Made by a program: the position numbers and the translations under genes. A DNA stretch of 64,000 bases from positions 25,110,001-25,174,000 of the forward strand of contig NW_027362764.1 in NCBI RefSeq assembly GCF_046119375.1, written 5' to 3'. Position 1 is the first letter of the stretch, and each line of letters opens with the position of its first letter. The notes beneath the pieces were generated by a model. That model was given only the letters and a program-made list of their open reading frames with translations. It did no database searches and was not told the DNA's origin. Positions 3,001 to 30,072 of the stretch are shown piece by piece. This DNA comes from Phyllobates terribilis (lineage: Eukaryota).

Positions 3001-6000
3001 TGTTTTTCTGCGGCTCCTCACTATTTGTGCGCGCACAGGTGTGTTTCTGCGGCTCCTCACTATTTGTGCGCGCGCATGTGTGTTTCTGCGGCTCCTCACT
3101 ATTTGTGTGCGCACAGGTTTCTGCTTCTCCTCACTATTTGTGTGCGTGCAGGTGTGTTTCTGCGGCTCCTCACTATTTGTGCGCGCACAGGTGTGTTTCT
3201 GCGGCTCCTCACTATTTGTGCGCGCACAGGTGTGTTTCTGCGGCTCCTCACTATTTGTGCGCGCGCAGGTGTGTTTCTGCGGCCCCTGACTTTGTGTGCG
3301 CACAGGTTTCTGGGGCTCCTCACTATTTGTGCGCGCGCAGGTGTGTTTCTGCGGCTCCTCACTATTTGTGTGCGCACAGGTTTCTGCGGCTCCTCACTAT
3401 TTGTGTGCGCACAGGTTTCTGCGGCTCCTCACTATTTGTGCGCGCGCATGTGTGTTTCTGCGGCTCCTCACTATTTGTGTGCGCACAGGTTTCTGCGGCT
3501 CCTGACTATTTGTGCGCGCGCAGGTGTGTTTCTGCGGCTCCTCACTATTTGTGTTCGCACAGGTTTCTGCGGCTCCTCACCATTTGTGCGCGCGCAGGTG
3601 TGTTTCTGCGGCTCCTCACTATTTGTGCGCGCGCAGGTGTGTTTCTGCGGCTCCTCACTATTTGTGTGCTCACAGGTTTCTGCGGGTCCTCACTATTTGT
3701 GCGCGCGCAGGTGTGTTTCTGCGGCTCCTCACTATTTGTGTGCGCACAGGTTTCTGCGGCTCCTCACTATTTGTGTGCGCACAGGTTTCTGCGGCTCCTC
3801 ACTATTTGTGCGCGCACAGGTGTGTTTCTGCGGCTCCTCACTATTTGTGCGTTCACAGGTGTGTTTCTGCGGCTCCTCACTATTTGTGTGCGCGCAGGTG
3901 TGTTTCTGCGGCTCCTCACTATTTGTGTGCGCACAGGTGTGTTTCTGCGGCTCCTCACTATTTGTGTGCGCACAGGTGTGTTTCTGCGGCTCCTCACTAT
4001 TTGTGTGCGTGCAGGTGTGTTTCTGCGGCTCCTCACTATTTGTGTGCGTGCAGGTGTGTTTCTGCGGCTCCTCACTATTTGTGTGCGCACAGGTTTCTGC
4101 GGCTCCTCACTATTTGTGTGCGCACAGGTGTGTTTCTGCGGCTCCTCACTATTTGTGTGCGCACAGGTGTGTTTCTGCGGCTCCTCACTATTTGTGTGCG
4201 AGCAGGTGTGTTTCTGCGGCTCCTCACTATTTGTTTGCGTGCAGGTGTGTTTCTGCGGCTCCTCACTATTTGTGTGCGCACAGGTTTCTGCGGCTCCTCA
4301 CTATTTGTGCGCGCACAGGTGTGTTTCTGCGGCTCCTCACTATTTGTGCGCGCACAGGTGTGTTTCTGCGGCTTCTCACTATTTGTGCGCTCACAGGTGT
4401 GTTTCTGCGGCTCCTCACTATTTGTGCGCGCGCAGGTGTGTTTCTGCGGCTCCTCACTATTTGTGTGCGCACAGGTGTGTTTCTGCGGCTCCTCACTATT
4501 TGTGTGCGCACAGGTGTGTTTCTGCGGCTCATTACTATTTGTGTGCGCACAGGTGTGTTTCTGCGGCTCCTCACTATTTGTGTGCGCACAGGTGTTTCTG
4601 CGGCTCCTCACTATTTGTGTGCGCACAGGTGTGTTTCTGCGGCTCATTACTATTTGTGTGCGCACAGGTGTGTTTCTGCGGCTCCTCACTATTTGTGCGC
4701 GCACAGGTGTGTTTCTGCTGCTCTATTTGCGTGCGCACAGGTGTGTTTCTGCGGGTCCTCACTATTTGTGCGCGCACAGGTGTGTTTCTGCGGCTCCTCA
4801 CTATTTGTGCACGCACAGGTGTGTTTCTGCGGCTCATTACTATTTGTGTGCGCACAGGTGTGTTTCTGCGGCTCCTCCCTATTTGCGCACGCACAGGTGT
4901 GTTTCTGCGGCTCCTCCCTATTTGCGCGCGCACAGGTGTGTTTCTGCGGCTCATTACTATTTGTGCGCGCACAGGTGTGTTTCTGCGGCTCCTCACTATT
5001 TGTGCACGCACAGGTGTGTTTCTGCGGCTCATTACTATTTGTGCGCGCACAGGTGTGTTTCTGCGGCTCCTCACTATTTGTGTGCGCACTGGTTTCTGCG
5101 GCTCCTCACTATTTGTGTGCGCACAGGTTTCTGCGGCTCCTCACTATTTGTGTGCGTACAGGTGTGTTTCTGCGGTTCCTCACTATTTGTGTGCGTGCAG
5201 GTGTGTTTCTGCGGCTCCTCACTATTTGTGTGCTCACAGGTTTCTGCGGCTCCTCACTATTTGTGTGCGTACAGGTGTGTTTCTGCGGCTCCTCACTATT
5301 TGTGCGCGCACAGGTGTGTTTCTGCGGCTCATTACTATTTGTGTGCGCACAGGTGTGTTTCTGCGGCTCCTCACTATTTGTGCCCGCACAGGTGTGTCTG
5401 CGGCTCCTCACTATTTGTGCGCGCACAGGTGTTTTTCTGCGGCTCCTCACTATTTGTGCGCGCACAGGTGTTTTTCTGCGGCTCCTCACTATTTGTGCGC
5501 GCACAGGTGTTTTTCTGCGGCTCCTCACTATTTGTGCGCGCACAGGTGTGTTTCTGCGGCTCCTCACTATTTGTGCGCGCGCATGTGTGTTTCTGCGGCT
5601 CCTCACTATTTGTGTGCGCACAGGTTTCTGCTTCTCCTCACTATTTGTGTGCGTGCAGGTGTGTTTCTGCGGCTCCTCACTATTTGTGCGCGCACAGGTG
5701 TGTTTCTGCGGCTCCTCACTATTTGTGCGCGCACAGGTGTGTTTCTGCGGCTCCTCACTATTTGTGCGCGCGCAGGTGTGTTTCTGCGGCCCCTGACTTT
5801 GTGTGCGCACAGGTTTCTGGGGCTCCTCACTATTTGTGCGCGCGCAGGTGTGTTTCTGCGGCTCCTCACTATTTGTGTGCGCACAGGTTTCTGCGGCTCC
5901 TCACTATTTGTGTGCGCACAGGTTTCTGCGGCTCCTCACTATTTGTGCGCGCGCATGTGTGTTTCTGCGGCTCCTCACTATTTGTGTGCGCACAGGTTTC

Positions 6001-15825: not shown

Positions 15826-16383
15826 TGTGCTCAATGATGACATTGGGGGGGCGCTGTGACAATGTAGAGTCAGTCTGGGTAAATGTACATGGGGATGGCC
15901 ATAATGGAAAGCTGCTGATTGGAGTTTGTTACAAGCCTCCTCATATAGCTGAGCTTGTAGGGGATGAAATGCTGGAGCAAATTAAAAATGCAGCAAATAA
16001 TAATAGGGTCCTTATTATGGGGGATGGTAACTATCCAGATACTCAATGGGACATAGTATCGTCCGGTTTTGCTAAAAGTTCTTATCTACAGTTCAGAACA
16101 ATGACCTCTCTCAGCTGTAGATGAACCGACCAGGGGAGGTGCTCTGCTGGGTCTGGTGCTCTGCTGGGTCTGGTGCTCTGCTGGGTCTGGTTTCAAATCT
16201 ACAAGTCCGGGAGTATTTGGAAAACAGCGACCATAATATGGTAAGATTCAATGTAATATTTAAAAAAAAAAAAAGAGAAATGCAAAAACCTGGAATTTAG
16301 GAAAGCTGATTTCAGCAAATTAAGGGAAGAGCTTAATCATGTAGACTGGGACCATGTCATGGTAACTGGGGATACCGAACATA
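15826..16383 (+). mobile_element. CR1-type LINE fragment 2 (ORF2 endonuclease continuation)
   Basis: NVESVWVNVHG..LIGVCYKPP..RVLIMGDGNYPD (degenerate YRPP and GDFN motifs), then PTRGGAL and SDHNMV remnants. Confidence 0.85.
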
Positions 16384-16470
16384 CAAGTGCGCTCACTAAA
16401 TTAGAATATCATCAAAAAGTTTATTTATTTCAGTTCTTCAATACAAAAAGTGAAACTCCTATATTATATA

Positions 16471-19400
16471 CACTGTGTTCCAAATTATTATGCAAATAAT
16501 AGTTTCTCAGATTTTCCCAAATTCCCTATATGAATTGCAGTCATTGTAATTTTCCAGTCAAATAACTATTAGAGGACAATTGAAAGGTTTTTGTATAATC
16601 TGCCGATGATAACAGGATATTTTTAAAAAATAAAACACTCAAGCTGCACTCAAAATGCATGTTCCAAATTATTATGCACAGCAGAGTTTTCAACCTTTTC
16701 ATTTTAATAAAGAACAAAAAAATGGTAATTTTTGCAATTATAAGCATTAGCAGGTTATTACACACTGAAATCAAACAGTTTACAACTCAAAACTTTATTC
16801 TAGGTGATGTTACATTTGCACATAGGACCCCTTGTTGGAAAGGAGCTTCTGAACTCTCTCGCCCATTGAATTTGTCAGGTTTTGGATGGTTTCTGCTTCA
16901 ATTGTTTTGCATGAGGACAGAATACCCTCCCAGAGCTGTTGCTTAGATGTGAACTGCCTCCCGCCATCATAGACACTCCTTTTGATGATGCTCCAGAGGT
17001 TCTCAATGGGGTAGAGGTCAGGGGAGCATGGGGGTCACACCATAAGTTTGTCCCCTTTTATGCCCATAGCAGCCAGAGATGCAGATGTGTTATGTGCAGC
17101 ATGAGACGGGGCATTATCATGCATGAAATGATCTCGATGGTCCAGATGGATGGAGTGGAGGATGGCTGGTTGATGGACACCTCATGCAAACACGGCTACG
17201 GCGCCAACAAGGAGGAGGTGGAGTAATGTTTTGGGCTGGAATCATGGGGAGAGAGATTGTCGGCCCTTTTAGGATCCCTGAAGGGGTAAAGATGAACTCC
17301 ATAATGTATGTTGAGTTTCTCAAACAGCACTTCCTTCCATGGTTCAAGAAGAAGAACCGTGTATTCCGCAGCAAGATCATTTTCATGCATGATAATGCCC
17401 CGTCTCATGCTGCACATAACACATCTGCATCTCGCTGCTATGGGCATAAAAGGGGACAAACTTATGGTGTGGCCCCCATGCTCCCCTGACCTCAACCCCA
17501 TTGAGAACCTCTGGAGCATCATCAAAAGGAGTGTCTATGATGGTGGGAGGCAGTTCACATCTAAGCAACAGCTCTGGGAGGGTATTCTGTCCTCATTAGT
17601 GTTGAGCGATACCTTCCGATATCAGGAAATATCGGATCGGATTGGACCGATTCCGATACCGGAAACCAATGCAAGTCAATGGGACACAAATATCGGAATG
17701 AAAATAAACCCTTTCTTTCCTTGTAGGTTAATTCTACATGAAGGAAAACAACTAACAATAATGTAAAATGTATTGGGGGAGGTGGTTGCCCAAATCGATG
17801 GGAACAGTGCTCACAGTGAAACATGAAAAGCGGCAATTCAGCAGCGGCATACACCGGTACCCGACAATTTAGAACAGAAAGAATAGAGCATCACACATAG
17901 ATTAGATAGATAGAAACATGCCAGTCACATATATAAGAAGTACAGTGATAGTGTTGCTTACTGTACTTGTCATTTAGTGTTAAAGGATTTATTAAAAAAA
18001 AAAATTGGCGTGGGGTTCCCCATAATTTTAGTCTCTAGCGGAGGTTAAGCAGACGGCTGGGGCAGATGTTTGAAGCCTGGGAAGGGGGTAATACCCACGG
18101 AGCTTCCCAGGCTACTAATATCAGCCCCCAGCTGAATACCTAGCCTTTACAAGCTATTAAAATGGGGGACCCCCAAAAAAATGATGTGGGGTCCCCCCTA
18201 TTTTAATAGCTAGCAAAGGCTAGGCAGACAGCTGGGGCTGATATTAATAGCCCAGGAAGGGTGCCATGAATATTGGCCCCCTCCCAGGCTAGAAACACCA
18301 GCCGTCAACCTCCCCAGAAATGGCGCATCCATAGGATGCGCCAATTCTGGCACTTAGCCTCGCTCTTCCCACTGCCCTGGTGCGGTGGCAGTGGGGTAAT
18401 AGTGGTGGGGTTCATGTCAGCTTATAATGTCAGCTGACATCAAGCCCAGGTTAGTAATGGAGAGGCGTCTATAAGACACCCCCATTACTAACCCCATAGT
18501 CAAAGTTAAAAAAAAACACAAACACCCAGAATAAAGTCCTTTAATTGAAATAAACACACAATTCTTTATTGTTCTAAATTAAACCATACTTACCGTCACG
18601 CCCATTCCAGCTGAAGCCAACGATCTCCTGCAATAAAAGTAAAATAATAAAGCAACCTCATCCTTACCTTTCCATGGTTCCCAGGACGGCTCCAGCTCTG
18701 CTACATCGAGATGACAGGCTGGACCGCAGCAGAACGCTGCCATCCAGCCTGTCATCCCGCAGACACTGAGAAGCGCAGGCTTGCTTGTGCTCCTCAGTGG
18801 CTCGCTGTGACGGCATAAAGATGAGCCGAGGTCATGTCCAATGAACTCGGCTCACCTCATGCACGTCACTGACAGTGTGGGAAAATTCTCCTGCACTCAG
18901 CGCTTCAGCGTGAGAATTTTCCCACGCTGTCAGTGACGTGCATGAGGCGAGTTCATGTCCAATGAACTCAGCTCACCTCATGTACGTCACTGACACAGCG
19001 TGGGAAAATTCTCCTGCATTCAGCGCTTCAGCGTGAGAATTTTCCCACGCTGTCAGTGACGTGCATGAGGTGAGGTCATGTCCAATGCACTCAGCTCACC
19101 TCATGTACGTCACTGACAGCGTGGGAGAATTCTCACGCTGAAGCGCTGAGTGCAGGAGAATTTTCCCACGCTGTCAGTGACGTACATGAGGTGAGCCGAG
19201 TTCATTGGACATGACCTCGGCTCATCTTTATGCTGTCACAGCGAGACACTGAGGCACGCAAGCATGCCTGCGCTTCTCAGTGTCTGTGGGATGACAGGCT
19301 GGATGGCGGCGTTCTGCTGCGGTCCAGCCTGTCATGTGAATGTAGCAGAGCTCAAGCTGTCCTGGGAACCATGGAAAGGTAAGGATGAGGTTGCTTTATT

Positions 19401-22400
19401 ATTTTTCTTTTATTGCAGGAGATCGTTGGCTTCAGCTGGAATGGGCGTGACGGTAAGTATGGTTTAATTTAGAACAATAAAGAATTGTGTCTTTATTTTA
19501 ATTAAAGGACTTTTTTCTGGGTGTTTGTGTTTTTTTTAAATACTTTACTAGAAATTCATGGCGGTCATGTCTAATATTGGCGTGACCCCATGAATTTCGG
19601 GCTTGGGGCCAGCTGATAATACCAAGCTGGCCCTAACCCCTTTATTACCCAGTGAGCCACCGCACCAGGGCCCTGGATGAGTTGGGTACAGCGCCAGAAG
19701 ATGGCGCTTCTATGAACGCGCCATTTTCCGGGGTGGCTGCGGACTGCAATTAGCAGGGGGGGGGGGGGGGGCAGAAAGCTTGGGCCTCCCTGCGCTGCAG
19801 ATTCCAGCCCCCAGCTGCCTAGTTGTACCTGGCTGGACACAAATATAGGGCGAAGCCCCACCTCAATTTTTTTTTAATTATTTCATGAATTTCCTGAAAT
19901 AATTTAAAAAAAAATTGACGTGGGGCTTCGCACTATATTTGTGTCCAGCCAGGTACAGCAGGCAGGAACGGGCTGCCCCCAACCACCAGCTGCCTATTTG
20001 TACCTGGCCGGACACAACAATATAGGGAAGCCCTTTTTTTCTTAATTATTTCATGAATTTCATGAAATAATTAAAAAAAAAAAATACGTGGGGCTTCGCC
20101 CTATTTTTGTGTCCAGCCAGGTACAACTAGGCAGCTGGGGGCTGGAATCTGCAGCGCAGGGAGGCCCAAGCTTTCTGGCCCCCCCCCCCCCCCCGGTGCA
20201 AATTGCAGTCCGCAGCCACCCCAGAAGTTCATAGAAGTGCCATCTTCTGGCGCTGTACCCAACTCATCCAGGGCCCTGGTGCGGTGGCTCACTGGGTAAT
20301 AAAGGGGTTAGGGCCAGCTTGGCATTATCAGCTGGCCCTAAGCCCGAAATTCATGGGGTCACTCCAATATTAGACATGACCGCCATGAATTTCTAGTAAA
20401 GTATTTAAAAAAACACAAACACCCAGAAAAAAGTCCTTTAATGGAAATAAAGACACAATTCTTTATTGTTCTAAATTAAACCATACTTACCGTCACGCCC
20501 ATTCCAGCTGAAGCCAACGATCTCCTGCAATAAAAGAAAAATAATAAAGCAGCATCGTCCCTACCTTTCCATGGTTCCCAGGACCGGTCCAGCTCTGCTA
20601 CATCGAGATGACAGGCTGGACCGCAGCAGAACGCTGCCATCCAGCCTGTCATCCCGCAGACACTGAGAAGCGCAGGCATGCTTGCGCTCCTCAGTGTCTC
20701 GCTGTGACGGCATCCAGATGAGCCGAGGTCATGTCCAATGAACTCGGCTCACCTCATGCACGTCACTGACAGCGTGGGAGAATTCTCCTGCACTCAGCGC
20801 TTCAGCGTGAGAATTTTCCCACGCTGTCAGTGACGTGAAGGAGGTGAGGTCATGTCCAATGAACTCGGCTCACCTCATGTACGTCACTGACAGCGTGGGA
20901 GAATTCTCACGCTGAAGCGCTGAGTGCAGGAGAATTCTCCCACGCTGTCAGTGACGTGCATGAGGTGAGCTGAGTTCATTGGACATGACCTCGGCTCATC
21001 TGGATGCCGTCACAGCCAGACACTGAGGAGGGCAAGCATGCCTGCGCTTCTCAGTGTCTGCGGGATGACAGGCTGGATGGCAGCGTTCTGCTGCGGTCCA
21101 GCCTGTCATCTCGATGTAGCAGAGCTGAAGCTGTCCTGGGAACCATGGAGAGGTAAGGATGATGCTGCTTTATTATTTTTCTTTTATTGCAGGAGATCGT
21201 TGGCTTCAGCTGGAATGGGCGTGATGGTAAGTATGGTTTAATTTAGAACAATAAAGAATTGTGTCTTTATTTCCATTAAAGGACTTTTTTCTGGGTGTTT
21301 GTGTTTTTTTGTAACTTTGACTATGGGGTTAGTAATGGGGGTGTCTTATAGACGCCTCTCCATTACTAACCTGGGCTTGATGTCAGCTGGCATTATAAGC
21401 GGACATCAACCCCAACCCTATTACCCCCTGCCACCGCACCAGGGCAGCGTGGAAGAGCGAGGCTAAGTGCCAGAATTGGGGCATCCTATGGATGCGCCAT
21501 TTCTGGGGCGGCTGACGGCTGGTGTTTCTAGCCTGGGAGGGGGCCAATATTCATGGCACCCTTCCTGGGCTATTAATATCAGCCCCCAGCTGTCTGCCTA
21601 GCCTTTGCTAGCTATTAAAATAGGGGGGACCCCACATCATTTTTTTGGGGGTCCCCCATTTTAATAGCTAGTAAAGGCTAGGTATTCAGCTGGGGGCTGA
21701 TATTAGTAGCCTGGGAAGCTCCGTGGGTATTACCCCCTTCCCAGGCTTCAAACATCTGCCCCAGCCGTCTGCTTAACCTCCGCTAGAGACTAAAATTACG
21801 GGGACCCCCACGCCAATTTTTTTTTTAATAAATCCTTTATTTTAACACTAAATGACAAGTACAGTAACCAACACTGTCACTGTACTTATTATATATGTGA
21901 CTGACATGTTTCTATCTATCTAATCTATGTGTGATGCTCTATTCTTTCTGTTCTAAATTGTCGGGTACCGGTGTATGCCGCTGATGAATTGCCGGCCGGC
22001 TTTTTTTAAGAGACGGTGCATGAAAACACTATTGTTTTTTTTAATAAATCCTTTACACTAAATGACAAGTACAGTAAGCTGAGCGCTGCCATCCAGCTTG
22101 TCATCCTTCAGAGACGCTGCAGAGCGCAGGCATTATGGGAACTTCCGATTCCGGTATTCGATATTCTAAAAGTATCGGAACTCGGTATCGGAATGCTCAA
22201 CACTAGTCCTCATGCAAAACAATTGAAGCAGAAACCATCCAAAACCTGACAAATTCAATGGACGAGAGAGTTCAGAAGCTCCTTTCCAACAAGGGGTCCT
22301 ATGTGCAAATGTAACATCACCTAGAATAAAGTTTTGAGTTGAAAACTGTTTGATTTCAGTTTGTAATAACCTGCTAATGCTTATAATTTCACAAATGACC

Positions 22401-22654
22401 ATTTTTTTGTTCTTTATTAAAATGAAAAGGTTGAAAACTCTGCTGTGCAGAATAATTTGGAACATGCATTTTGAGTGCAGTTTGAGTGTTTTATTTTTTT
22501 AAAAATATCCTGTTATCATCGGCAGATTATACAAAAACCTTTCAATTGTCCTCTAATAGTTATTTGACTGGAAAATTACAATGACTGCAATTCATATAGG
22601 TAATCTGTGAAAATCTGAGAAAATATTATTTGCATAATAATTTGGAACACAGTA
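16471..22654. mobile_element. Tc1-B: DD37E (TRT-like) fold-back derivative inserted in the left TIR of Tc1-A
   Basis: Termini cactgtgttccaaattattatgcaaataat / attatttgcataataatttggaacacagta with TA flanks. Transposase remnant [36 protein letters not shown]. Confidence 0.85.
17597..22205. mobile_element. hAT-type non-autonomous element (TIR TAGTGTTGAGC) with a 4.2-kb internal nested palindrome
   Basis: Perfect 8-bp TSD gtcctcat at 17589-17596 and 22206-22213; removal restores the Tc1-B transposase 3' sequence. Confidence 0.9.
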
Positions 22655-22667
22655 TAGTGTGACCAAG

Positions 22668-23190
22668 CCAGAGGGATCTATTATATAGAGTCATTACACA
22701 CAGAGGGATCTATTATATAGAGTCATTACATACAGAGGGATCTATTATATAGAGTCATTACACACAGAGGGATCTATTATATAGAGTCATTACACACAGA
22801 GGGATCTATTATATAGAGTCATTACACACAGAGGGATCTATTATATAGAGCCATTACACGCAGAGGGATCTATTATATAGAGCCATTACACGCAGAGGGA
22901 TCTATTATATAGAGCCATTACACGCAGAGGGATCTATTATATAGAGCCATTACACGCAGAGGGATCTATTATATAGAGTCATTACACGCAGAGGGATCTA
23001 TTATATAGAGTCATTACACGCAGAGGGATCTATTATATAGAGTCATTACACGCAGAGGGATCTATTATATAGAGTCATTACACGCAGAGGGATCTATTAT
23101 ATAGAGTCATTACACGCAGAGGGATCTATTATATAGAGCCATTACACGCAGAGGAATCTGTTATATAGAGCCATTACACACAGAGGGATC
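22668..23190. repeat. 32-bp tandem array (~16 units) within the left TIR of Tc1-A
   Basis: Unit tattatatagagtcattacacacagagggatc; the TIR resumes as tatttcacgtgtttatttc at 23191. Confidence 0.95.
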
Positions 23191-23357
23191 TATTTCACGT
23201 GTTTATTTCTGTTAATGTTGATGATTATGGCTTACAGCCAATGAGAACACAAGAGTCATTATCTCAGTAAATTAGAATAATTAACAAAAAAACAGCTGCA
23301 AAGGCTTCCTAAGCTTTTAAAGTGGTCCCTTAGTCTGTTTCAGTAGGTTCCACAATC

Positions 23358-24647
23358 ATAGGGAAGACTGCTGACTTGACAGATGTCCAGAAGGCAGTCA
23401 CTGACACACTCCACAAGGAGGGAAAGCCACAAAAGGTCATTGCTAAAGAATCTGTCTGTTCACACAGTGCTGTATCCAAGTAGATTAATGGAAAGTTGAG
23501 TGGAAGGAAAAAGTATGGTAGAAAAAGGTGCAGAAGCAACCGGGATAACCGCAGCCTGGAAAGGATTGTTAAGAAAAGGCCATTCAAACATTTGGATGAG
23601 ATTCACAAGGAGTGGACTGCTGCTGGAGTCATTGCTTCAAGAGCCACCACACACAGACGTATCCAGAACATGGGCTACAAGTGTCACATTCCTTGTGTCA
23701 ACCCACTCATGACCAATAGACAACGCCAGAAGCCTCTTACCTGGGCCAAGGAGAAGAAGACCTGGACTGTTCTCAGTGCTCCAAGGTGTTTTCAGATGAA
23801 AGTAAATTTTGCATTTCATTTGGAAATCAAGGTCCCAGAGTCTGGAGGAAGAGTGGAGAGGCCACAATCCAAGCTGCTGGAGGTCTGGTGTGAAGTCTCC
23901 ACAATCAGTGATGGTTTGGGGGGCCATGTCATCTGCTGGTGGAGGTCCACTGTGTTTTATCAAGACCAAAGTCAGCGCCGCCATCTACCAGGACATTTTA
24001 CAGCCCTTCATGCTTCCCTCTGCCGACAAGCTTTATGGAGATGGAAATGTCCTTCTCCAGCAGGACTTGGCCCCTGTCCACACGGCCAAAAGTACCAATA
24101 CCTCGTTTACACACAACAGTATCACTGTGCTTGATTGGCAGCAAACTCGCCTGACCTTAACCCCATAGAGAATCTATTATAGAGAATCTATGGGGTATTG
24201 TCAAGAGGAAGATGAGAGACCCCAGACCCAACAATGCAGACGAGCTGAAGGCTGCTATCAAAGCCACCTGGGCTTCCATAACACCTCAGCAGCCACAGGC
24301 TGATCCCTCCATGCCACAGGCTGATCCCTCCATGCCACAGGCTGATCCCTCCATGTCACAGGCTGATCCCTCCATGCCACAGGCTGATCCCTCCATGCCA
24401 CAGGCTGATCGCCTCCATCCCAAAGGCTGATCCCTCCATGCCACAGGCTGATCGCCTCCATGCCACAGGCTGATCGCCTCCATGCCACAGGCTGATCCCT
24501 CCATGCCACAGGCTGATCGGCTCCATGCCACAGGCTGATCGCCTCCATGCCACAGGCTGATCCCTCCATGCCACAGGCTGATCCCTCCATGCCACATTGC
24601 CGCACTGATGCAGTAATTGATGCACAAGGAGCCCGACCAAGTATTGA
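23358..24647 (+). pseudogene. Tc1-A transposase pseudogene (DD34E)
   Basis: Mutated start (ATA-GGG-AAG-ACT), HTH region, [28 protein letters not shown] remnants with 34-aa D-E spacing, ends PTKY*. Multiple frameshifts. Confidence 0.88.
24292..24595. repeat. 21/22-bp tandem array (~14 units) inside the Tc1-A transposase 3' end
   Basis: Unit gccacaggctgatc(g)cctccat, bounded by gccac direct repeats. Confidence 0.93.
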
Positions 24648-24796
24648 GGCATTTACTGAACAGACATTTCAGATTTTAAAAACCTTTTTCCAGCTGGTGC
24701 TATTAAGTATTCTAATTTACTGAGATAATGAGTTTCACGTTTTCATTGGCTGTAAGCCATAATCATCAACATTAACAGAAATAAACACGAGAAAGA

Positions 24797-27700
24797 GATC
24801 CCTCTGTGTGTAATGACTCTATATAATAGATCCCTCTGTGTGTAATGACTCTATATAATAGATCCCTCTGTGTGTAATGACTCTATATAATAGATCCCTC
24901 TGTGTGTAATGACTCTATATAATAGATCCCTCTGTGTGTAATGACTCTATATAATAGATCCCTCTGGGTGTAATGGCTCTATATGATAGATCGCTCTGTG
25001 TGTAATGACTCTATATAATAGATCCCTCTGTGTGTAATGACTCTATATAATAGATCCCTCTGTGTGTAATGACTCTATATAATAGATCCCTCTGGGTGTA
25101 ATGACTCTATATAATAGATCCCTCTGGGTGTAATGACTCTATATAATAGATCCCTCTGTGTGTAATGATTCTATATAATAGATCCCTCTGTGTGTAATGA
25201 CTCTATATAATAGATCCCTCTGGGTGTAATGACTCTATATAATAGATCCCTCTGTGTGTAATGATTCTATATAATAGATCCCTCTGTGTGTAATGACTCT
25301 ATATAATAGATCCCTCTGTGTGTAATGACTCTATATAATAGATCCCTCTGTGTGTAATGGCTCTATATGATAGATCGCTCTGTGTGTAATGACTCTATAT
25401 AATAGATCCCTCTGTGTGTAATGACTCTATATAATAGATCCCTCTGTGTGTAATGACTCTATATAATAGATCCCTCTGGGTGTAATGACTCTATATAATA
25501 GATCCCTCTGGGTGTAATGACTCTATATAATAGATCCCTCTGTGTGTAATGATTCTATATAATAGATCCCTCTGTGTGTAATGACTCTATATAATAGATC
25601 GCTCTGTGTGTAATGGCTCTATATAATAGATCCCTCTGTGTGTAACGGCTCTATATAATAGATCGCTCTGTGTGTAACGACTCTATATAATAGATCCCTC
25701 TGTGTGTAACGACTCTATATAATAGATCCCTCTGTGTGTAACGGCTCTATATAATAGATCCCTCTGTGTGTAACGACTCTATATAATAGATCCCTCTGTG
25801 TGTAACGGCTCTATATAATAGATCGCTCTGTGTGTAACGACTCTATATAATAGATCCCTCTGTGTGTAACGACTCTATATAATAGATCCCTCTGTGTGTA
25901 ATGACTCTATATAATAGATCCCTCTGGGTGTAATGACTCTATATAATAGATCCCTCTGTGTGTAATGACTCTATATAATAGATCCCTCTGTGTGTAATGA
26001 TTCTATATAATAGATCCCTCTGTGTGTAATGACTCTATATAATAGATCCCTCTGTGTGTAATGACTCTATATAATAGATCCCTCTGTGTGTAATGACTCT
26101 ATATAATAGATCCCTCTGTGTGTAATGACTCTATATAATAGATCCCTCTGTGTGTAATGGCTCTATATAATAGATCGCTCTGTGTGTAATGACTCTATAT
26201 AATAGATCCCTCTGTGTGTAATGACTCTATATAATAGATCCCTCTGTGTGTAATGACTCTATATAATAGATCCCTCTGGGTGTAATGACTCTATATAATA
26301 GATCCCTCTGGGTGTAATGACTATATAATAGATCCCTCTGTGTGTAATGACTCTATATAATAGATCCCTCTGTGTGTAATGACTCTATATAATAGATCGC
26401 TCTGTGTGTAATGACTCTATATAATAGATCACTCTGTGTGTAATGACTCTATATAATAGATCACTCTGCGTGTAATGACTCTATATAATAGATCCCTCTG
26501 CGTGTAATGACTATATAATAGATCGCTCTGTGTGTAATGACTCTATATAATAGATCCCTCTGGGTGTAATGACTCTATATAATAGATCCCTCTGTGTGTA
26601 ATGACTCTATATAATAGATCGCTCTGTGTGTAATGACTCTATATAATAGATCCCTCTGTTTGTAATGACTCTATATAATAGATCCCTCTGTGTGTAATGA
26701 CTCTATATAATAGATCGCTCAGTGTGTAATGACTCTATATAATAGATCCCTCTGTGTGTAATGACTCTATATAATAGATCCCTCTGTGTGTAATGATTCT
26801 ATATAATAGATCCCTCTGTGTGTAATGATTCTATATAATAGATCCCTCTGTGTGTAATGACTCTATATGATAGATCCCTCTGTGTGTAATGGCTCTATAT
26901 GATAGATCGCTCTGTGTGTAATGACTCTATATAATAGATCCCTCTGTGTGTAATGACTCTATATAATAGATCACTCTGTGTGTAATGACTCTATATAATA
27001 GATCCCTCTGGGTGTAATGACTCTATATAATAGATCCCTCTGGGTGTAATGACTATATAATAGATCCCTCTGTGTGTAATGATTCTATATAATAGATCCC
27101 TCTGTGTGTAATGACTCTATATAATAGATCGCTCTGTGTGTAATGACTCTATATAATAGATCCCTCTGTGTGTAATGGCTCTATATAATAGATCGCTCTG
27201 TGTGTAACGACTCTATATAATAGATCCCTCTGTGTGTAACGACTCTATATAATAGATCCCTCTGTGTGTAACGACTCTATATGATAGATCCCTCTGTGTG
27301 TAACGGCTCTATATAATAGATCGCTCTGTGTGTAACGACTCTATATAATAGATCCCTCTGTGTGTAATGACTCTATATAATAGATCCCTCTGTGTGTAAT
27401 GACTCTATATAATAGATCCCTCTGGGTGTAATGACTCTATATAATAGATCCCTCTGTGTGTAATGACTCTATATAATAGATCCCTCTGTGTGTAATGATT
27501 CTATATAATAGATCCCTCTGTGTGTAATGACTATATAATAGATCCCTCTGTGTGTAATGACTCTATATAATAGATCCCTCTGTGTGTAATGACTCTATAT
27601 AATAGATCCCTCTGTGTGTAATGACTCTATATAATAGATCCCTCTGTGTGTAATGGCTCTATATAATAGATCGCTCTGTGTGTAATGACTCTATATAATA

Positions 27701-29425
27701 GATCGCTCTGTGTGTAATGACTCTATATAATAGATCCCTCTGGGTGTAATGACTCTATATAATAGATCCCTCTGGGTGTAATGACTCTATATAATAGATC
27801 CCTCTGGGTGTAATGACTCTATATAATAGATCCCTCTGTGTGTAATGACTCTATATAATAGATCCCTCTGTGTGTAATGACTCTATATAATAGATCCCTC
27901 TGTGTGTAATGACTCTATATAATAGATCGCTCTGTGTGTAATGACTCTATATAATAGATCACTCTGTGTGTAATGACTCTATATAATAGATCACTCTGCG
28001 TGTAATGACTCTATATAATAGATCCCTCTGTGTGTAATGACTATATAATAGATCGCTCTGTGTGTAATGACTCTATATAATAGATCCCTCTGGGTGTAAT
28101 GACTCTATATAATAGATCCCTCTGTGTGTAATGACTCTATATAATAGATCGCTCTGTGTGTAATGACTCTATATAATAGATCCCTCTGTTTGTAATGACT
28201 CTATATAATAGATCCCTCTGTGTGTAATGACTCTATATAATAGATCCCTCTGTGTGTAATGACTCTATATAATAGATCCCTCTGTGTGTAATGAGTCTAT
28301 ATAATAGATCCCTCTTGGGTGTAATGACTCTATATAATAGATCACTCTGTGTGTAATGACTCTATATAATAGATCGCTCTGTGTGTAATGACTCTATATA
28401 ATAGATCCCTCTGTGTGTAATGACTCTATATAATAGATCCCTCTGTGTGTAATGATTCTATATAATAGATCCCTCTGTGTGTAATGATTCTATATAATAG
28501 ATCCCTCTGTGTGTAATGACTCTATATAATAGATCGCTCTGTGTGTAATGACTCTATATAATAGACCGCTCTGTGTGTAATGACTCTATATAATAGATCA
28601 CCCTGTGTGTAATGACTCTATATAATAGATCCCTCTGTGTGTAATGACTCTATATAATAGATCCCTCTGTGTGTAATGACTCTATATAATAGATCACTCT
28701 GTGTGTAATGACTCTATATAATAGATCCCTCTGCGTGTAATGACTATATAATAGATCCCTCTGCGTGTAATGACTCTATATAATAGATCCCTCTGTATGT
28801 AATGACTGTATATAATAGATCCCTCTGTGTGTAATGACTCTATATAACAGATCGCTCTGTGTGTAATGACTCTATATAATAGATCGCTCTGTGTGTAATG
28901 GCTCTATATAATAGATCGTTCTGCGTGTAATGACTCTTTATAATAGATCGCTCTGCGTGTAATGACTCTATATAATAGATTGCTCTGCGTGTAATGACTC
29001 TATATAATAGATCCCTCTGCGTGTATTGACTCTATATAATAGATCCCTCTGCGTGTAATGACTCTATATAATAAATCCCTCTGTGTGTAATGGCTCTATA
29101 TAATAGATCCCTCTGTGTGTAATGACTCTATATAATAAATCCCTCTGTGTGTAATGGCTCTATATAATAGATCCCTCTGTGTGTAATGACTCTATATAAT
29201 AGATCCCTCTGCGTGTAATGACTCTATATAATAGATCCCTCTGTGTGTAATGACTCTATATAATAGATCCCTCTGCGTGTAATGACTCTATATAATAGAT
29301 CCCTCTGTGTGTAATGGCTCTATATAATAGATACCTCTGTGTGTAATGACTCTATATAATAGATCCCTCTGTGTGTAATGACTCTATATAATAGATCCCT
29401 CTGTGTGTAATGACTCTATATAATA
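24797..29425. repeat. 32-bp tandem array (~145 units) within the right TIR of Tc1-A, inverted relative to 22668-23190
   Basis: Unit gatccctctgtgtgtaatgactctatataata is the reverse complement of the left-TIR unit. Confidence 0.97.
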
Positions 29426-29498
29426 TAGGAGTTTCACTTTTTGTATTGAAGAACTGAAATTAATAAACTTTTTGATGATATTCTAATTTAGTGACTTG

Positions 29499-30072
29499 TA
29501 AATGTGACATGTTTAAGGAAATACTTCTAGAATTCTGTAGAAACTTTATACCCTCTGGTACTAAAATGTCCAGGAATAAAAAGAAACCATTATGGATAAA
29601 TAAGACAGTACAAAGTTTAATAATACGAAACCAAACGGCCGAGAAATCAGAAATAACATTTCAGGAGTATAAAGATCTCAATAAGAAATGTAAAAATGAA
29701 ATCAAGCAGCAAAGTTATCTACAGAGAAATAAATCCCAAAAATGTTATAAATAAATCAACGCCAAAAAGAAAAAAAAACAGATGATATCGGCCCCTTAAG
29801 ACGATAATAACAAGATAATTATAGAGGACAAAGAAAAGGCTGAGCTATTAAACTGGCACGTCTCATCCGGGTTCACAATGAACGGTCTGTACCAGGGATC
29901 TTTCAACTGGGCAAAAATCAAAGTTCATCACCGGATATAACTCGTTCAACACAAAAAGAAGTACGCCTGCTTCTGAGCAAATTAAACATTGACAAATCCC
30001 AGATGGCATTCACCTATGGATACTGTGGGAGCTGAGCTCAGTAATTGACAGACCGCTGTATCTCATATTCTA
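29499..30072 (+). mobile_element. CR1-type LINE fragment 3 (ORF2 linker up to the RT N-terminus), 3'-truncated
   Basis: MFKEILLEFCRNFIP..KKPLWINK.., then DGIHPWILWELSSVIDRPLYLIF (degenerate PGPDGIHPRVLKEL motif). Confidence 0.85.

What the first reader, a model, noticed from the sequence alone, without database searches (positions are those of the whole stretch)
22668..29425. Satellite born inside a transposon TIR and amplified in both TIRs in mirror image
Seen: the 32-bp unit is an internal segment of the Tc1-A TIR, between gaaactcctata and tatttcacgtgtttatttc, bounded by tatt microhomology. It is expanded ~16x in the left TIR and ~145x in the right. Variants (cgcag for cacag, gccatt for gtcatt) are shared by both arrays. 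Inference: either a mobile master element already carried tandemised TIRs and disperses satellite seeds, or the TIRs exchange sequence by conversion after insertion. The two arrays could pair as a large inverted repeat around the transposase.
Basis: partly seen in the sequence, partly recalled or inferred. Interest (0 to 1): 0.7.

Follow-up and report, generated by a model that had tools for sequence, protein, structure and literature searches.

The report
Dead Tc1 transposon with satellite-swollen arms
A dead Tc1 (Sleeping Beauty-type) transposon in a probable poison-frog genome has had one 32-base piece of each inverted end copied head to tail, 17 times on one side and 145 on the other, which is a clear but ordinary example of repeat DNA arising from a transposon end.

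Summary
Mirror-image 32-bp arrays lie at 22669-23194 (16 full units plus one disrupted unit) and 24794-29421 (145 units), around a decayed Tc1 transposase.

The element is larger than the finding: 16384-29498, with TA duplications at both ends. Its left outer end lies 6.2 kb upstream, because a second Tc1-like composite (16471-22654) is inserted in the first left unit.

The unit lies in the spacer between the outer and inner transposase-binding repeats of an IR/DR-type end. A related element in a metagenome contig (L001) aligns end to end and holds exactly one copy, flanked by a 7-bp direct repeat. So the unit is native end sequence, not a captured satellite.

- **Growth:** the right array grew by multi-unit block duplications, and it turned over long after insertion.
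- **Independence:** the two arrays now evolve separately. Each has private haplotypes, which argues against ongoing conversion between the arms.
- **Open question:** two derived variants are shared. Whether a short array was already present at insertion is about even odds.
- **Other species:** contigs from four related organisms all hold the transposon, but unit-bearing contigs are numerous in only one.

The kind is known (Tetris, Galileo, miDNA4, Xstir). An unchecked earlier scan note describes a similar double-arm 32-base case elsewhere in this genome. No function is indicated.

The parts
16382..16383 (.). Left TA target-site duplication of Tc1-A
   Evidence: TA on both sides. Removing 16384-29498 plus one TA restores an open frame of over 100 aa in the host LINE.
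16384..16465 (+). Left outer TIR part, holding the outer transposase-binding repeat (DRo, 16392-16408)
   Evidence: 98.7% identical to the right outer part. The DR motif occurs exactly four times in the window.
16466..16470 (+). First 5 bases of the first left 32-bp unit, cut off by the nested insertion
   Evidence: Sequence read, compared with the right arm.
16471..22654 (.). Nested second Tc1-like element (B) with TA duplication at 16469-70 and 22655-56. Internally it is a rearranged, largely palindromic composite.
   Evidence: Terminal inverted arms 16469-16918 and 22206-22656 are 96-97% complementary, and many nested inverted pairs centre near 19970. Sequence read.
22657..22682 (+). Rest of the first left unit. 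It holds a 13-base patch (22657-22669) unlike the unit consensus.
   Evidence: the patch is unique in the window.
22683..23194 (+). Left array, 16 full 32-bp units
23195..23284 (+). Left inner TIR part, holding the inner binding repeat (DRi, 23263-23279)
   Evidence: 91% identical to the right inner part. DR motif.
23352..24633 (+). Decayed Tc1 transposase gene, with at least three in-frame stops and several frameshifts
   Evidence: tblastn against the 346-aa relative P0123 covers aa 11-342 in three frames. The HTH_Tnp_Tc3_2 domain is found.
24165..24191 (+). 14-bp tandem duplication inside the transposase gene, private to this copy
   Evidence: Contigs of other copies run through without it (loose ends at 24139 and 24179).
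24292..24596 (+). 21-bp x14 minisatellite grown from transposase codons (CHRLIASMP region)
24703..24793 (-). Right inner TIR part, holding DRi (24708-24724)
24794..29421 (-). Right array, 145 units, with multi-unit block duplications
29422..29498 (-). Right outer TIR part, holding DRo (29479-29495). It has a 6-bp deletion near the tip relative to the left arm and to L001.
29499..29500 (.). Right TA target-site duplication

Best explanation
This is a dead Tc1-family transposon of the Sleeping Beauty (IR/DR) type, inserted at a TA inside a LINE reading frame. Each of its roughly 200-bp inverted ends has two transposase-binding repeats. A 32-bp piece of the spacer between them is single-copy in the family's original end and is bracketed by a short direct repeat (TATT here, ATATATT in a relative). 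That piece was duplicated by mispairing between the two short repeats. It then grew by unequal exchange or replication slippage in multi-unit steps, to 17 units in the left arm and 145 in the right. Most of the growth and turnover happened at this locus long after insertion, and the two arrays now evolve independently. Whether the element already carried a short array in each arm when it inserted is open, at about even odds. The arrays have no indicated function. They are a by-product of a very array-prone genome region. Shown here: the anatomy, the native single-copy origin, block duplication, recent turnover and independence of the arms. Inferred: the slippage and unequal-exchange mechanism, the loss of mobility caused by the stretched spacer, and the lack of function.
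For: Anatomy: the TA duplications and the restored host frame. Outer arms are 98.7% alike and inner arms 91%. The motif CTCA[C/G]TAAATTAGAATA occurs exactly four times, in outer and inner positions on both arms. The transposase remnant has an HTH_Tnp_Tc3_2 domain. Its full-length relative P0123 has DDE_3 and matches the SB100X catalytic domain at E=1e-44. Origin: the end in L001 aligns 171/200 with the collapsed TIR with no gap at the unit. It has one copy, flanked by a 7-bp ATATATT repeat. Growth mode: right-array units 38-43 and 45-48 repeat as 86-91 and 93-96, units 121-127 repeat as 133-139, and a 30-bp variant unit recurs six times. Timing: only 12 variants private to a single unit in 4640 bp of right array (0.26%), against 3-5% of sites where this copy's unique part differs from the letters most family contigs show. 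Independence of the arms: Fisher tests. Context: 53% of the window is tandem arrays, and the same element holds a third array of 21 bp inside its gene.
Against: The duplication mechanism is inferred from the end products, not observed. The 3-5% figure may include subfamily differences already present at insertion, so the age gap is approximate. Units are not independent draws, so the Fisher p-values overstate significance. All five left-array variant types also occur in the right array (hypergeometric p=0.004), which a purely independent history does not predict unless mutation is strongly site-biased. Only one outgroup end was obtained.
Confidence: 0.8

Rival explanations
1. A mobile master element already carried tandem arrays in both ends. 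It spreads them by transposition, so the arrays here are largely inherited and the family seeds a genome-wide satellite.
For: Both arms hold arrays in the same register. C8 and G17 are derived states (T8 and A17 in L001 and in the common family variant) and are shared by both arms. G17 is concentrated in the outer 22 right units (8/21 against 3/116). That part resembles the left array, as if both kept an older common state. In organism A, 11,116 of 26,751 contigs laid on 23035-24291 fit two places, meaning they hold the unit. The 161 units of this locus seem too few to yield that many distinct contigs (my inference, not tested), so the repeat probably sits at many places.
Against: All four binding sites and an ordered assembly are needed for Sleeping Beauty transposition (PMC7827188). 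From my own knowledge of Sleeping Beauty end-structure studies, altering the spacer between the repeats lowers activity, so kilobase arrays should cripple mobility. The arrays turned over long after insertion (0.26% against 3-5%). Three of the five shared variants are single-unit in both arrays, which points to recurrent mutation at hot sites. Organisms B and C hold the family abundantly but few unit contigs (263 and 145).
Confidence: 0.3
2. After insertion the two arms exchanged sequence by gene conversion between inverted repeats, which keeps the arrays alike.
For: The unit consensus is the same in both arms except at position 17. All five left-array variants are also found on the right.
Against: Half of the right units carry C23, C17, G10, A7 or T23, none of which is on the left (0/16). 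The C8+G17 haplotype is 5/16 on the left and 0/137 on the right. The inner TIR parts next to the arrays differ by 9%, so no recent homogenisation has crossed them.
Confidence: 0.1
3. The transposon end captured a pre-existing satellite, as was proposed for miDNA4 in Xenopus.
For: That model exists for a frog Tc1/mariner MITE (PMC12628747).
Against: The segment is collinear, single-copy end sequence in a relative about 85% identical.
Confidence: 0.03
4. The arrays or their sizes are assembly artefacts.
For: Long tandem arrays and inverted repeats are hard to assemble, so unit counts may be off.
Against: Both arrays sit at the homologous point of two otherwise well-matched arms. They have distinct variant patterns and block structure. 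Unit contigs are abundant in independent runs.
Confidence: 0.02

Closest known systems
Tetris foldback transposon and its TIR-220 satellite, Drosophila virilis (PMC4079207)
   Same: Tandem repeats sit inside both TIRs between an outer and an inner domain. The repeat probably derives from TIR sequence. Copy number varies by unequal exchange. Kilobase arrays arise in a repeat-rich setting. The authors suggest large arrays disable transposition.
   Different: Tetris is non-autonomous and foldback-like, with 220-bp units. Here the host is an autonomous-type Tc1 with a recognisable transposase gene, the unit is 32 bp, and the single-copy ancestral state is seen directly in a relative.
miDNA4, a Tc1/mariner MITE with an internal satellite in Xenopus tropicalis (as summarised in PMC12628747 and PMC9659126)
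   Same: It is a frog Tc1/mariner element. The monomer is present as one copy or as arrays, and it is flanked by short AT-rich direct repeats thought to drive copy-number change.
   Different: miDNA4 is a MITE with one internal array, and its authors proposed capture of a pre-existing repeat. Here the arrays are in both TIRs in mirror image and the unit is native TIR spacer.
Galileo and FB foldback elements of Drosophila (Galileo as cited in PMC4079207; FB from my own knowledge)
   Same: The TIRs contain internal tandem repeats.
   Different: In Galileo the repeats carry extra transposase-binding sites. The 32-bp unit here does not contain the binding-repeat motif (four sites only, all outside the arrays). 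The transposase superfamily also differs.
Xstir / Xmix MITE-derived tandem repeats in Xenopus (PMC12628747)
   Same: Frog tandem repeats derived from the internal or TIR sequence of a DNA transposon.
   Different: A different element family and a different proposed mechanism (stem-loop processing of adjacent MITEs).
Sleeping Beauty IR/DR Tc1 elements (PMC7827188)
   Same: TIRs of about 200 bp with an outer and an inner binding repeat, TA target, and a related catalytic domain.
   Different: The normal spacer is about 170 bp. Here it is stretched to about 0.7 kb (plus a 6.2-kb insertion) and to 4.8 kb.

Membership tests
Tc1/mariner superfamily, Tc1 group with IR/DR ends | TA target-site duplication | tested here: met
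   TA at 16382-83 and 29499-500. The host LINE frame is restored when the element and one TA are removed.
Tc1/mariner superfamily, Tc1 group with IR/DR ends | Transposase with a paired-like HTH and a DDE catalytic domain | tested here: met
   The window piece hits HTH_Tnp_Tc3_2. The remnant aligns to aa 11-342 of P0123. P0123 has HTH_38, HTH_Tnp_Tc3_2 and DDE_3 and matches SB100X. The copy itself is broken.
Tc1/mariner superfamily, Tc1 group with IR/DR ends | Long TIRs, each with an outer and an inner direct repeat | tested here: met
   The 17-bp motif is found exactly four times, in symmetric positions. TIR arms match.
Transposon-derived satellite DNA | Monomer homologous to a transposon segment that is single-copy in unexpanded relatives | tested here: met
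   The L001 end has one collinear copy.
Transposon-derived satellite DNA | Long arrays at many genomic places, beyond the parent element | tested here: inconclusive
   11,116 unit-bearing contigs in organism A, against 145-1,123 in three other organisms. This suggests many places, but contigs built on 31-letter words cannot show array length or flanks.
Foldback elements (FB, Galileo, Tetris) | TIRs built largely of tandem repeats | tested here: met
   Arrays make up most of both arms at this locus.
Foldback elements (FB, Galileo, Tetris) | Non-Tc1 transposase or non-autonomous structure, with repeat-rich TIRs as a family-wide trait | tested here: not met
   The element encodes a Tc1 transposase remnant, and a relative has a plain TIR. 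It resembles a foldback element in form only.

The most novel reading that the evidence does not exclude
Array-bearing copies of this Tc1 family are still transposable, or were until recently. They carry short mirror-image arrays in both ends, kept alike by exchange between the arms, and so act as the vehicle that seeded a lineage-specific 32-bp satellite across one poison-frog genome.
Probability: 0.25. Interest if true: 0.55.

Novelty: new member of a known kind. Interest (0 to 1): 0.3.

Why it matters
The step from transposon to satellite is usually inferred from distant similarity. Here the parent segment, the microhomology that probably started the duplication, the block-wise growth and the independent fate of the two arms can all be read at one locus, with a single-copy outgroup. 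The unit is also far more common in one of four related genomes, which would make this family a convenient system for dating satellite birth in frogs with very large genomes. It does not change current understanding. Satellites born in TIRs and arrays swelling inside transposons are well documented, and unchecked notes of this scan describe other such arrays in this genome.

Tried and rejected
- **Fetching other copies of the family:**
  - Exact-pattern scans of viral contigs and genome contigs with two TIR patterns were blank.
  - The search for related loci with P0123 in viral contigs found nothing.
  - The single metagenome scan gave one useful contig, L001.
- **Protein searches:**
  - The word search with the 98-aa DDE piece returned only 57-70% identical fragments, because of the length filter.
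  - A 212-aa ORF scored on its first 92 residues was needed to reach full-length relatives.
- **Read laying:**
  - Contigs built on 31-letter words cannot count 32-bp units per arm, so unit number per copy could not be tabulated. Depth was not used as copy number.
- **Regular higher-order repeat in the right array:** rejected. There is no periodic signal in the autocorrelation, only discrete block duplications.
- **Unit as an extra transposase-binding site (the Galileo model):** rejected. The binding-repeat motif is absent from the arrays.
- **Rfam on 16000-30000:** no match.
- **Paper search for the TIR sequence:** none.
- **Findings search by sequence:** blank.
Full report
**Observation**

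Tandem Repeats Finder reports a 32-bp repeat x16.4 at 22669-23194 and x145.0 at 24796-29425. The two consensus units are reverse complements. I segmented both arrays in register.
- The left arm has 16 full units at 22683-23194.
- The right arm has 145 units at 24794-29421: 137 of 32 bp, six of 30 bp, one of 33 and one of 31.
- Both named variants (C at unit position 8, G at position 17) occur in both arrays.

**Anatomy, wider than the finding**

The 18-mer next to the right array also occurs at 16446. Reading there shows the missing outer part of the left arm at 16384-16465. It is 98.7% identical to the right outer part.

That outer part is followed by a second Tc1-like element (B, 16471-22654) with its own TA duplication. 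B is inserted five bases into the first left unit. B is itself a rearranged, largely palindromic composite.

The whole Tc1-A element is 16384-29498, with TA at 16382-83 and 29499-500. Removing it together with one TA gives an uninterrupted open frame of over 100 aa across the joint, in what looks like a LINE ORF. This fixes the boundaries.

Between the arrays lies a decayed transposase gene.
- Its pieces align to aa 11-342 of the 346-aa relative P0123 in three frames, with stops.
- One piece hits HTH_Tnp_Tc3_2.
- P0123 has HTH plus DDE_3 domains and matches the Sleeping Beauty SB100X catalytic domain at E=1e-44.
- The closest named relative is from Ranitomeya imitator, 83% identical over 92 aa. 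This fits an earlier scan note that the genome is probably a poison frog.

**IR/DR ends**

The motif CTCA[C/G]TAAATTAGAATA occurs exactly four times in the 64 kb (0.01 expected by chance):
- 16392, plus strand (outer left)
- 23263, plus strand (inner left)
- 24708, minus strand (inner right)
- 29479, minus strand (outer right)

This is the two-repeats-per-end layout described for Sleeping Beauty (PMC7827188). The 32-bp arrays lie in the spacer between the outer and inner repeats. Collapsed to one unit, that spacer is about 170 bp. The unit does not contain the motif, so the arrays do not multiply binding sites, unlike the model cited for Galileo (PMC4079207).

**Origin of the unit**

One exact-pattern scan of metagenome contigs found L001. 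It is animal DNA, with an intact 964-aa LINE reverse-transcriptase ORF. It ends 200 bp into a related Tc1 element.

That end aligns from tip to inner repeat with the Tc1-A arm collapsed to one unit: 171 of 200 aligned bases are identical, with no gap at the unit. It holds exactly one copy of the 32-bp segment, four bases different from the array consensus. In L001 the segment is bracketed by a 7-bp direct repeat, ATATATT. In the frog element the remaining microhomology is TATT.

Capture of a pre-existing satellite, the model proposed for miDNA4 (PMC12628747), is contradicted here.

**How the arrays grew**

The right array has no regular higher-order period. It does contain discrete block duplications:
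- units 38-43 and 45-48 recur as 86-91 and 93-96
- units 121-127 recur as 133-139
- a 30-bp variant unit, with the same neighbour, recurs six times

This is the signature of unequal exchange or slippage in multi-unit register.

Only 12 variant types are confined to a single unit in 4640 bp, which is 0.26%. By contrast, contigs of the family in four organisms disagree with this copy's unique part at 61 listed sites of 1257. About 37 of the 40 sites shown have the other letter in the majority in organism A. That is 3-5% divergence, plus private frameshifts, a private 14-bp duplication and stops. So the units coalesce roughly ten times more recently than the copy's own decay began. The bulk of the arrays was made or remade at this locus after insertion. 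One caveat applies: part of the 3-5% may be subfamily differences already present at insertion.

**Are the arms exchanging?**

All five variant types of the left array, all transitions, are also found in the right array. The right array holds 12 of the 32 possible transitions (hypergeometric p=0.004).

L001 and the commonest family variant seen at the last unit (letters between joints) both have T8 and A17. C8 and G17 are therefore derived and shared.

Against that, three points argue for independence:
- Three of the five shared types are single-unit in both arrays, which points to recurrent mutation at hot sites.
- Half of the right units carry C23, C17, G10, A7 or T23, and none of the 16 left units does (Fisher p=6e-5).
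- The C8+G17 haplotype is 5/16 on the left and 0/137 on the right (p=7e-6).

Units are not independent draws, so these p-values are generous. Still, the pattern is clear: the arms are not being homogenised with each other now.

G17 in the right array is concentrated in the outer 22 units (8/21 against 3/116). That part resembles the left array. One reading is that both arms once held a similar short array and the inner right part then expanded with new variants. I put about even odds on a short array having been present in both arms at insertion.

**Other genomes**

The internal part is held by runs of at least eight coded organisms from seven studies, at 0.39-0.60 of sampled words. All are kept as contigs built on 31-letter words, which cannot count 32-bp units.

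On 23035-24291, in four organisms, the internal region is covered by 20,000-42,000 contigs each. Contigs that fit two places of the stretch, meaning they hold the unit, number 11,116 in A, 1,123 in D, 263 in B and 145 in C.

The 161 units at this locus seem too few to yield eleven thousand distinct contigs. This is my inference, not a tested result. If it holds, the repeat in organism A sits at many places, and its amplification is lineage-specific. I did not use depth as copy number, as the tool instructs. Internally deleted derivatives of the family (about 380-420 bp missing) are present in all four organisms.

**Context**

53% of the window is tandem arrays. The same element carries a third array, 21 bp x14, grown from transposase codons.

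Unchecked notes of this scan list several other Tc1-derived arrays in this genome. One is a dead Tc1 with the same-sized 32-base piece expanded in both arms at another locus (s1-218010). Another is a 16.8-kb satellite inside a Tc1 IR/DR end (s1-237611). I could not test whether these belong to the same family. They are leads that the trait recurs.

**Comparison and verdict**

The structure works like the TIR-internal repeats of Tetris, Galileo and FB elements, and like the frog cases miDNA4 and Xstir (PMC4079207, PMC12628747, PMC9659126). It is a member of the Tc1 IR/DR group, not of the foldback families. No function is indicated.

All four binding repeats and an ordered assembly are needed for Sleeping Beauty transposition (PMC7827188). 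From my own knowledge, changes to the spacer lower activity. A spacer stretched to kilobases should therefore prevent mobility, which favours in-situ growth for the large arrays.

This is a clean new member of a known kind.

As a result, the decisive table of units per arm per copy could not be made.

Noticed in passing
window 16471-22654: The element nested in the left arm has Tc1-type ends (CACTGTG..., TA duplication), but inside it is a large rearranged palindrome. Arms 16469-16918 and 22206-22656 pair, and many further inverted pairs centre near 19970. The C-terminal part of its transposase appears to be present in three copies (two adjoining the termini, one in a local palindrome at 16911-17128 / 17381-17596). 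The third copy is inferred from the inverted pairs, not tested directly.
   Followed up: partly
window 22657-22669: A 13-base patch next to the right end of the nested element replaces 14 bases of the first left unit and matches nothing else in the window. It may be filler or a repair scar from the insertion, but it is unexplained.
   Followed up: partly
window 24292-24596 and 24165-24191: A 21-bp x14 minisatellite has grown from codons near the transposase C-terminus, and there is a 14-bp tandem duplication in the DDE region. Contigs of other copies run through without the duplication; the minisatellite lay outside the stretch laid and was not compared.
   Followed up: partly
window 1-64000: About 53% of the window is tandem arrays of at least 12 unrelated units (21 to 60 bp). 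The region is exceptionally array-prone.
   Followed up: no
window 23407-23828 (read laying joints): Contigs in all four organisms skip about 380-420 bp between about 23407-23418 and 23798-23828. This indicates abundant internally deleted, non-autonomous derivatives of the family.
   Followed up: no
window 16233-16383 and 29501-29700: The host of the insertion is a LINE-like ORF that stays open for over 100 aa across the reconstructed empty site.
   Followed up: partly
window 29490-29498: The right tip of Tc1-A lacks 6 bases that are present in the left tip and in L001, so the outermost end sequence of this arm is damaged.
   Followed up: yes
L001:988-3882 and 4486-4696: A contig filed as metagenome (ERZ506812) is animal DNA. 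It holds an intact 964-aa LINE reverse-transcriptase ORF followed by the end of a Tc1 element related to Tc1-A.
   Followed up: partly
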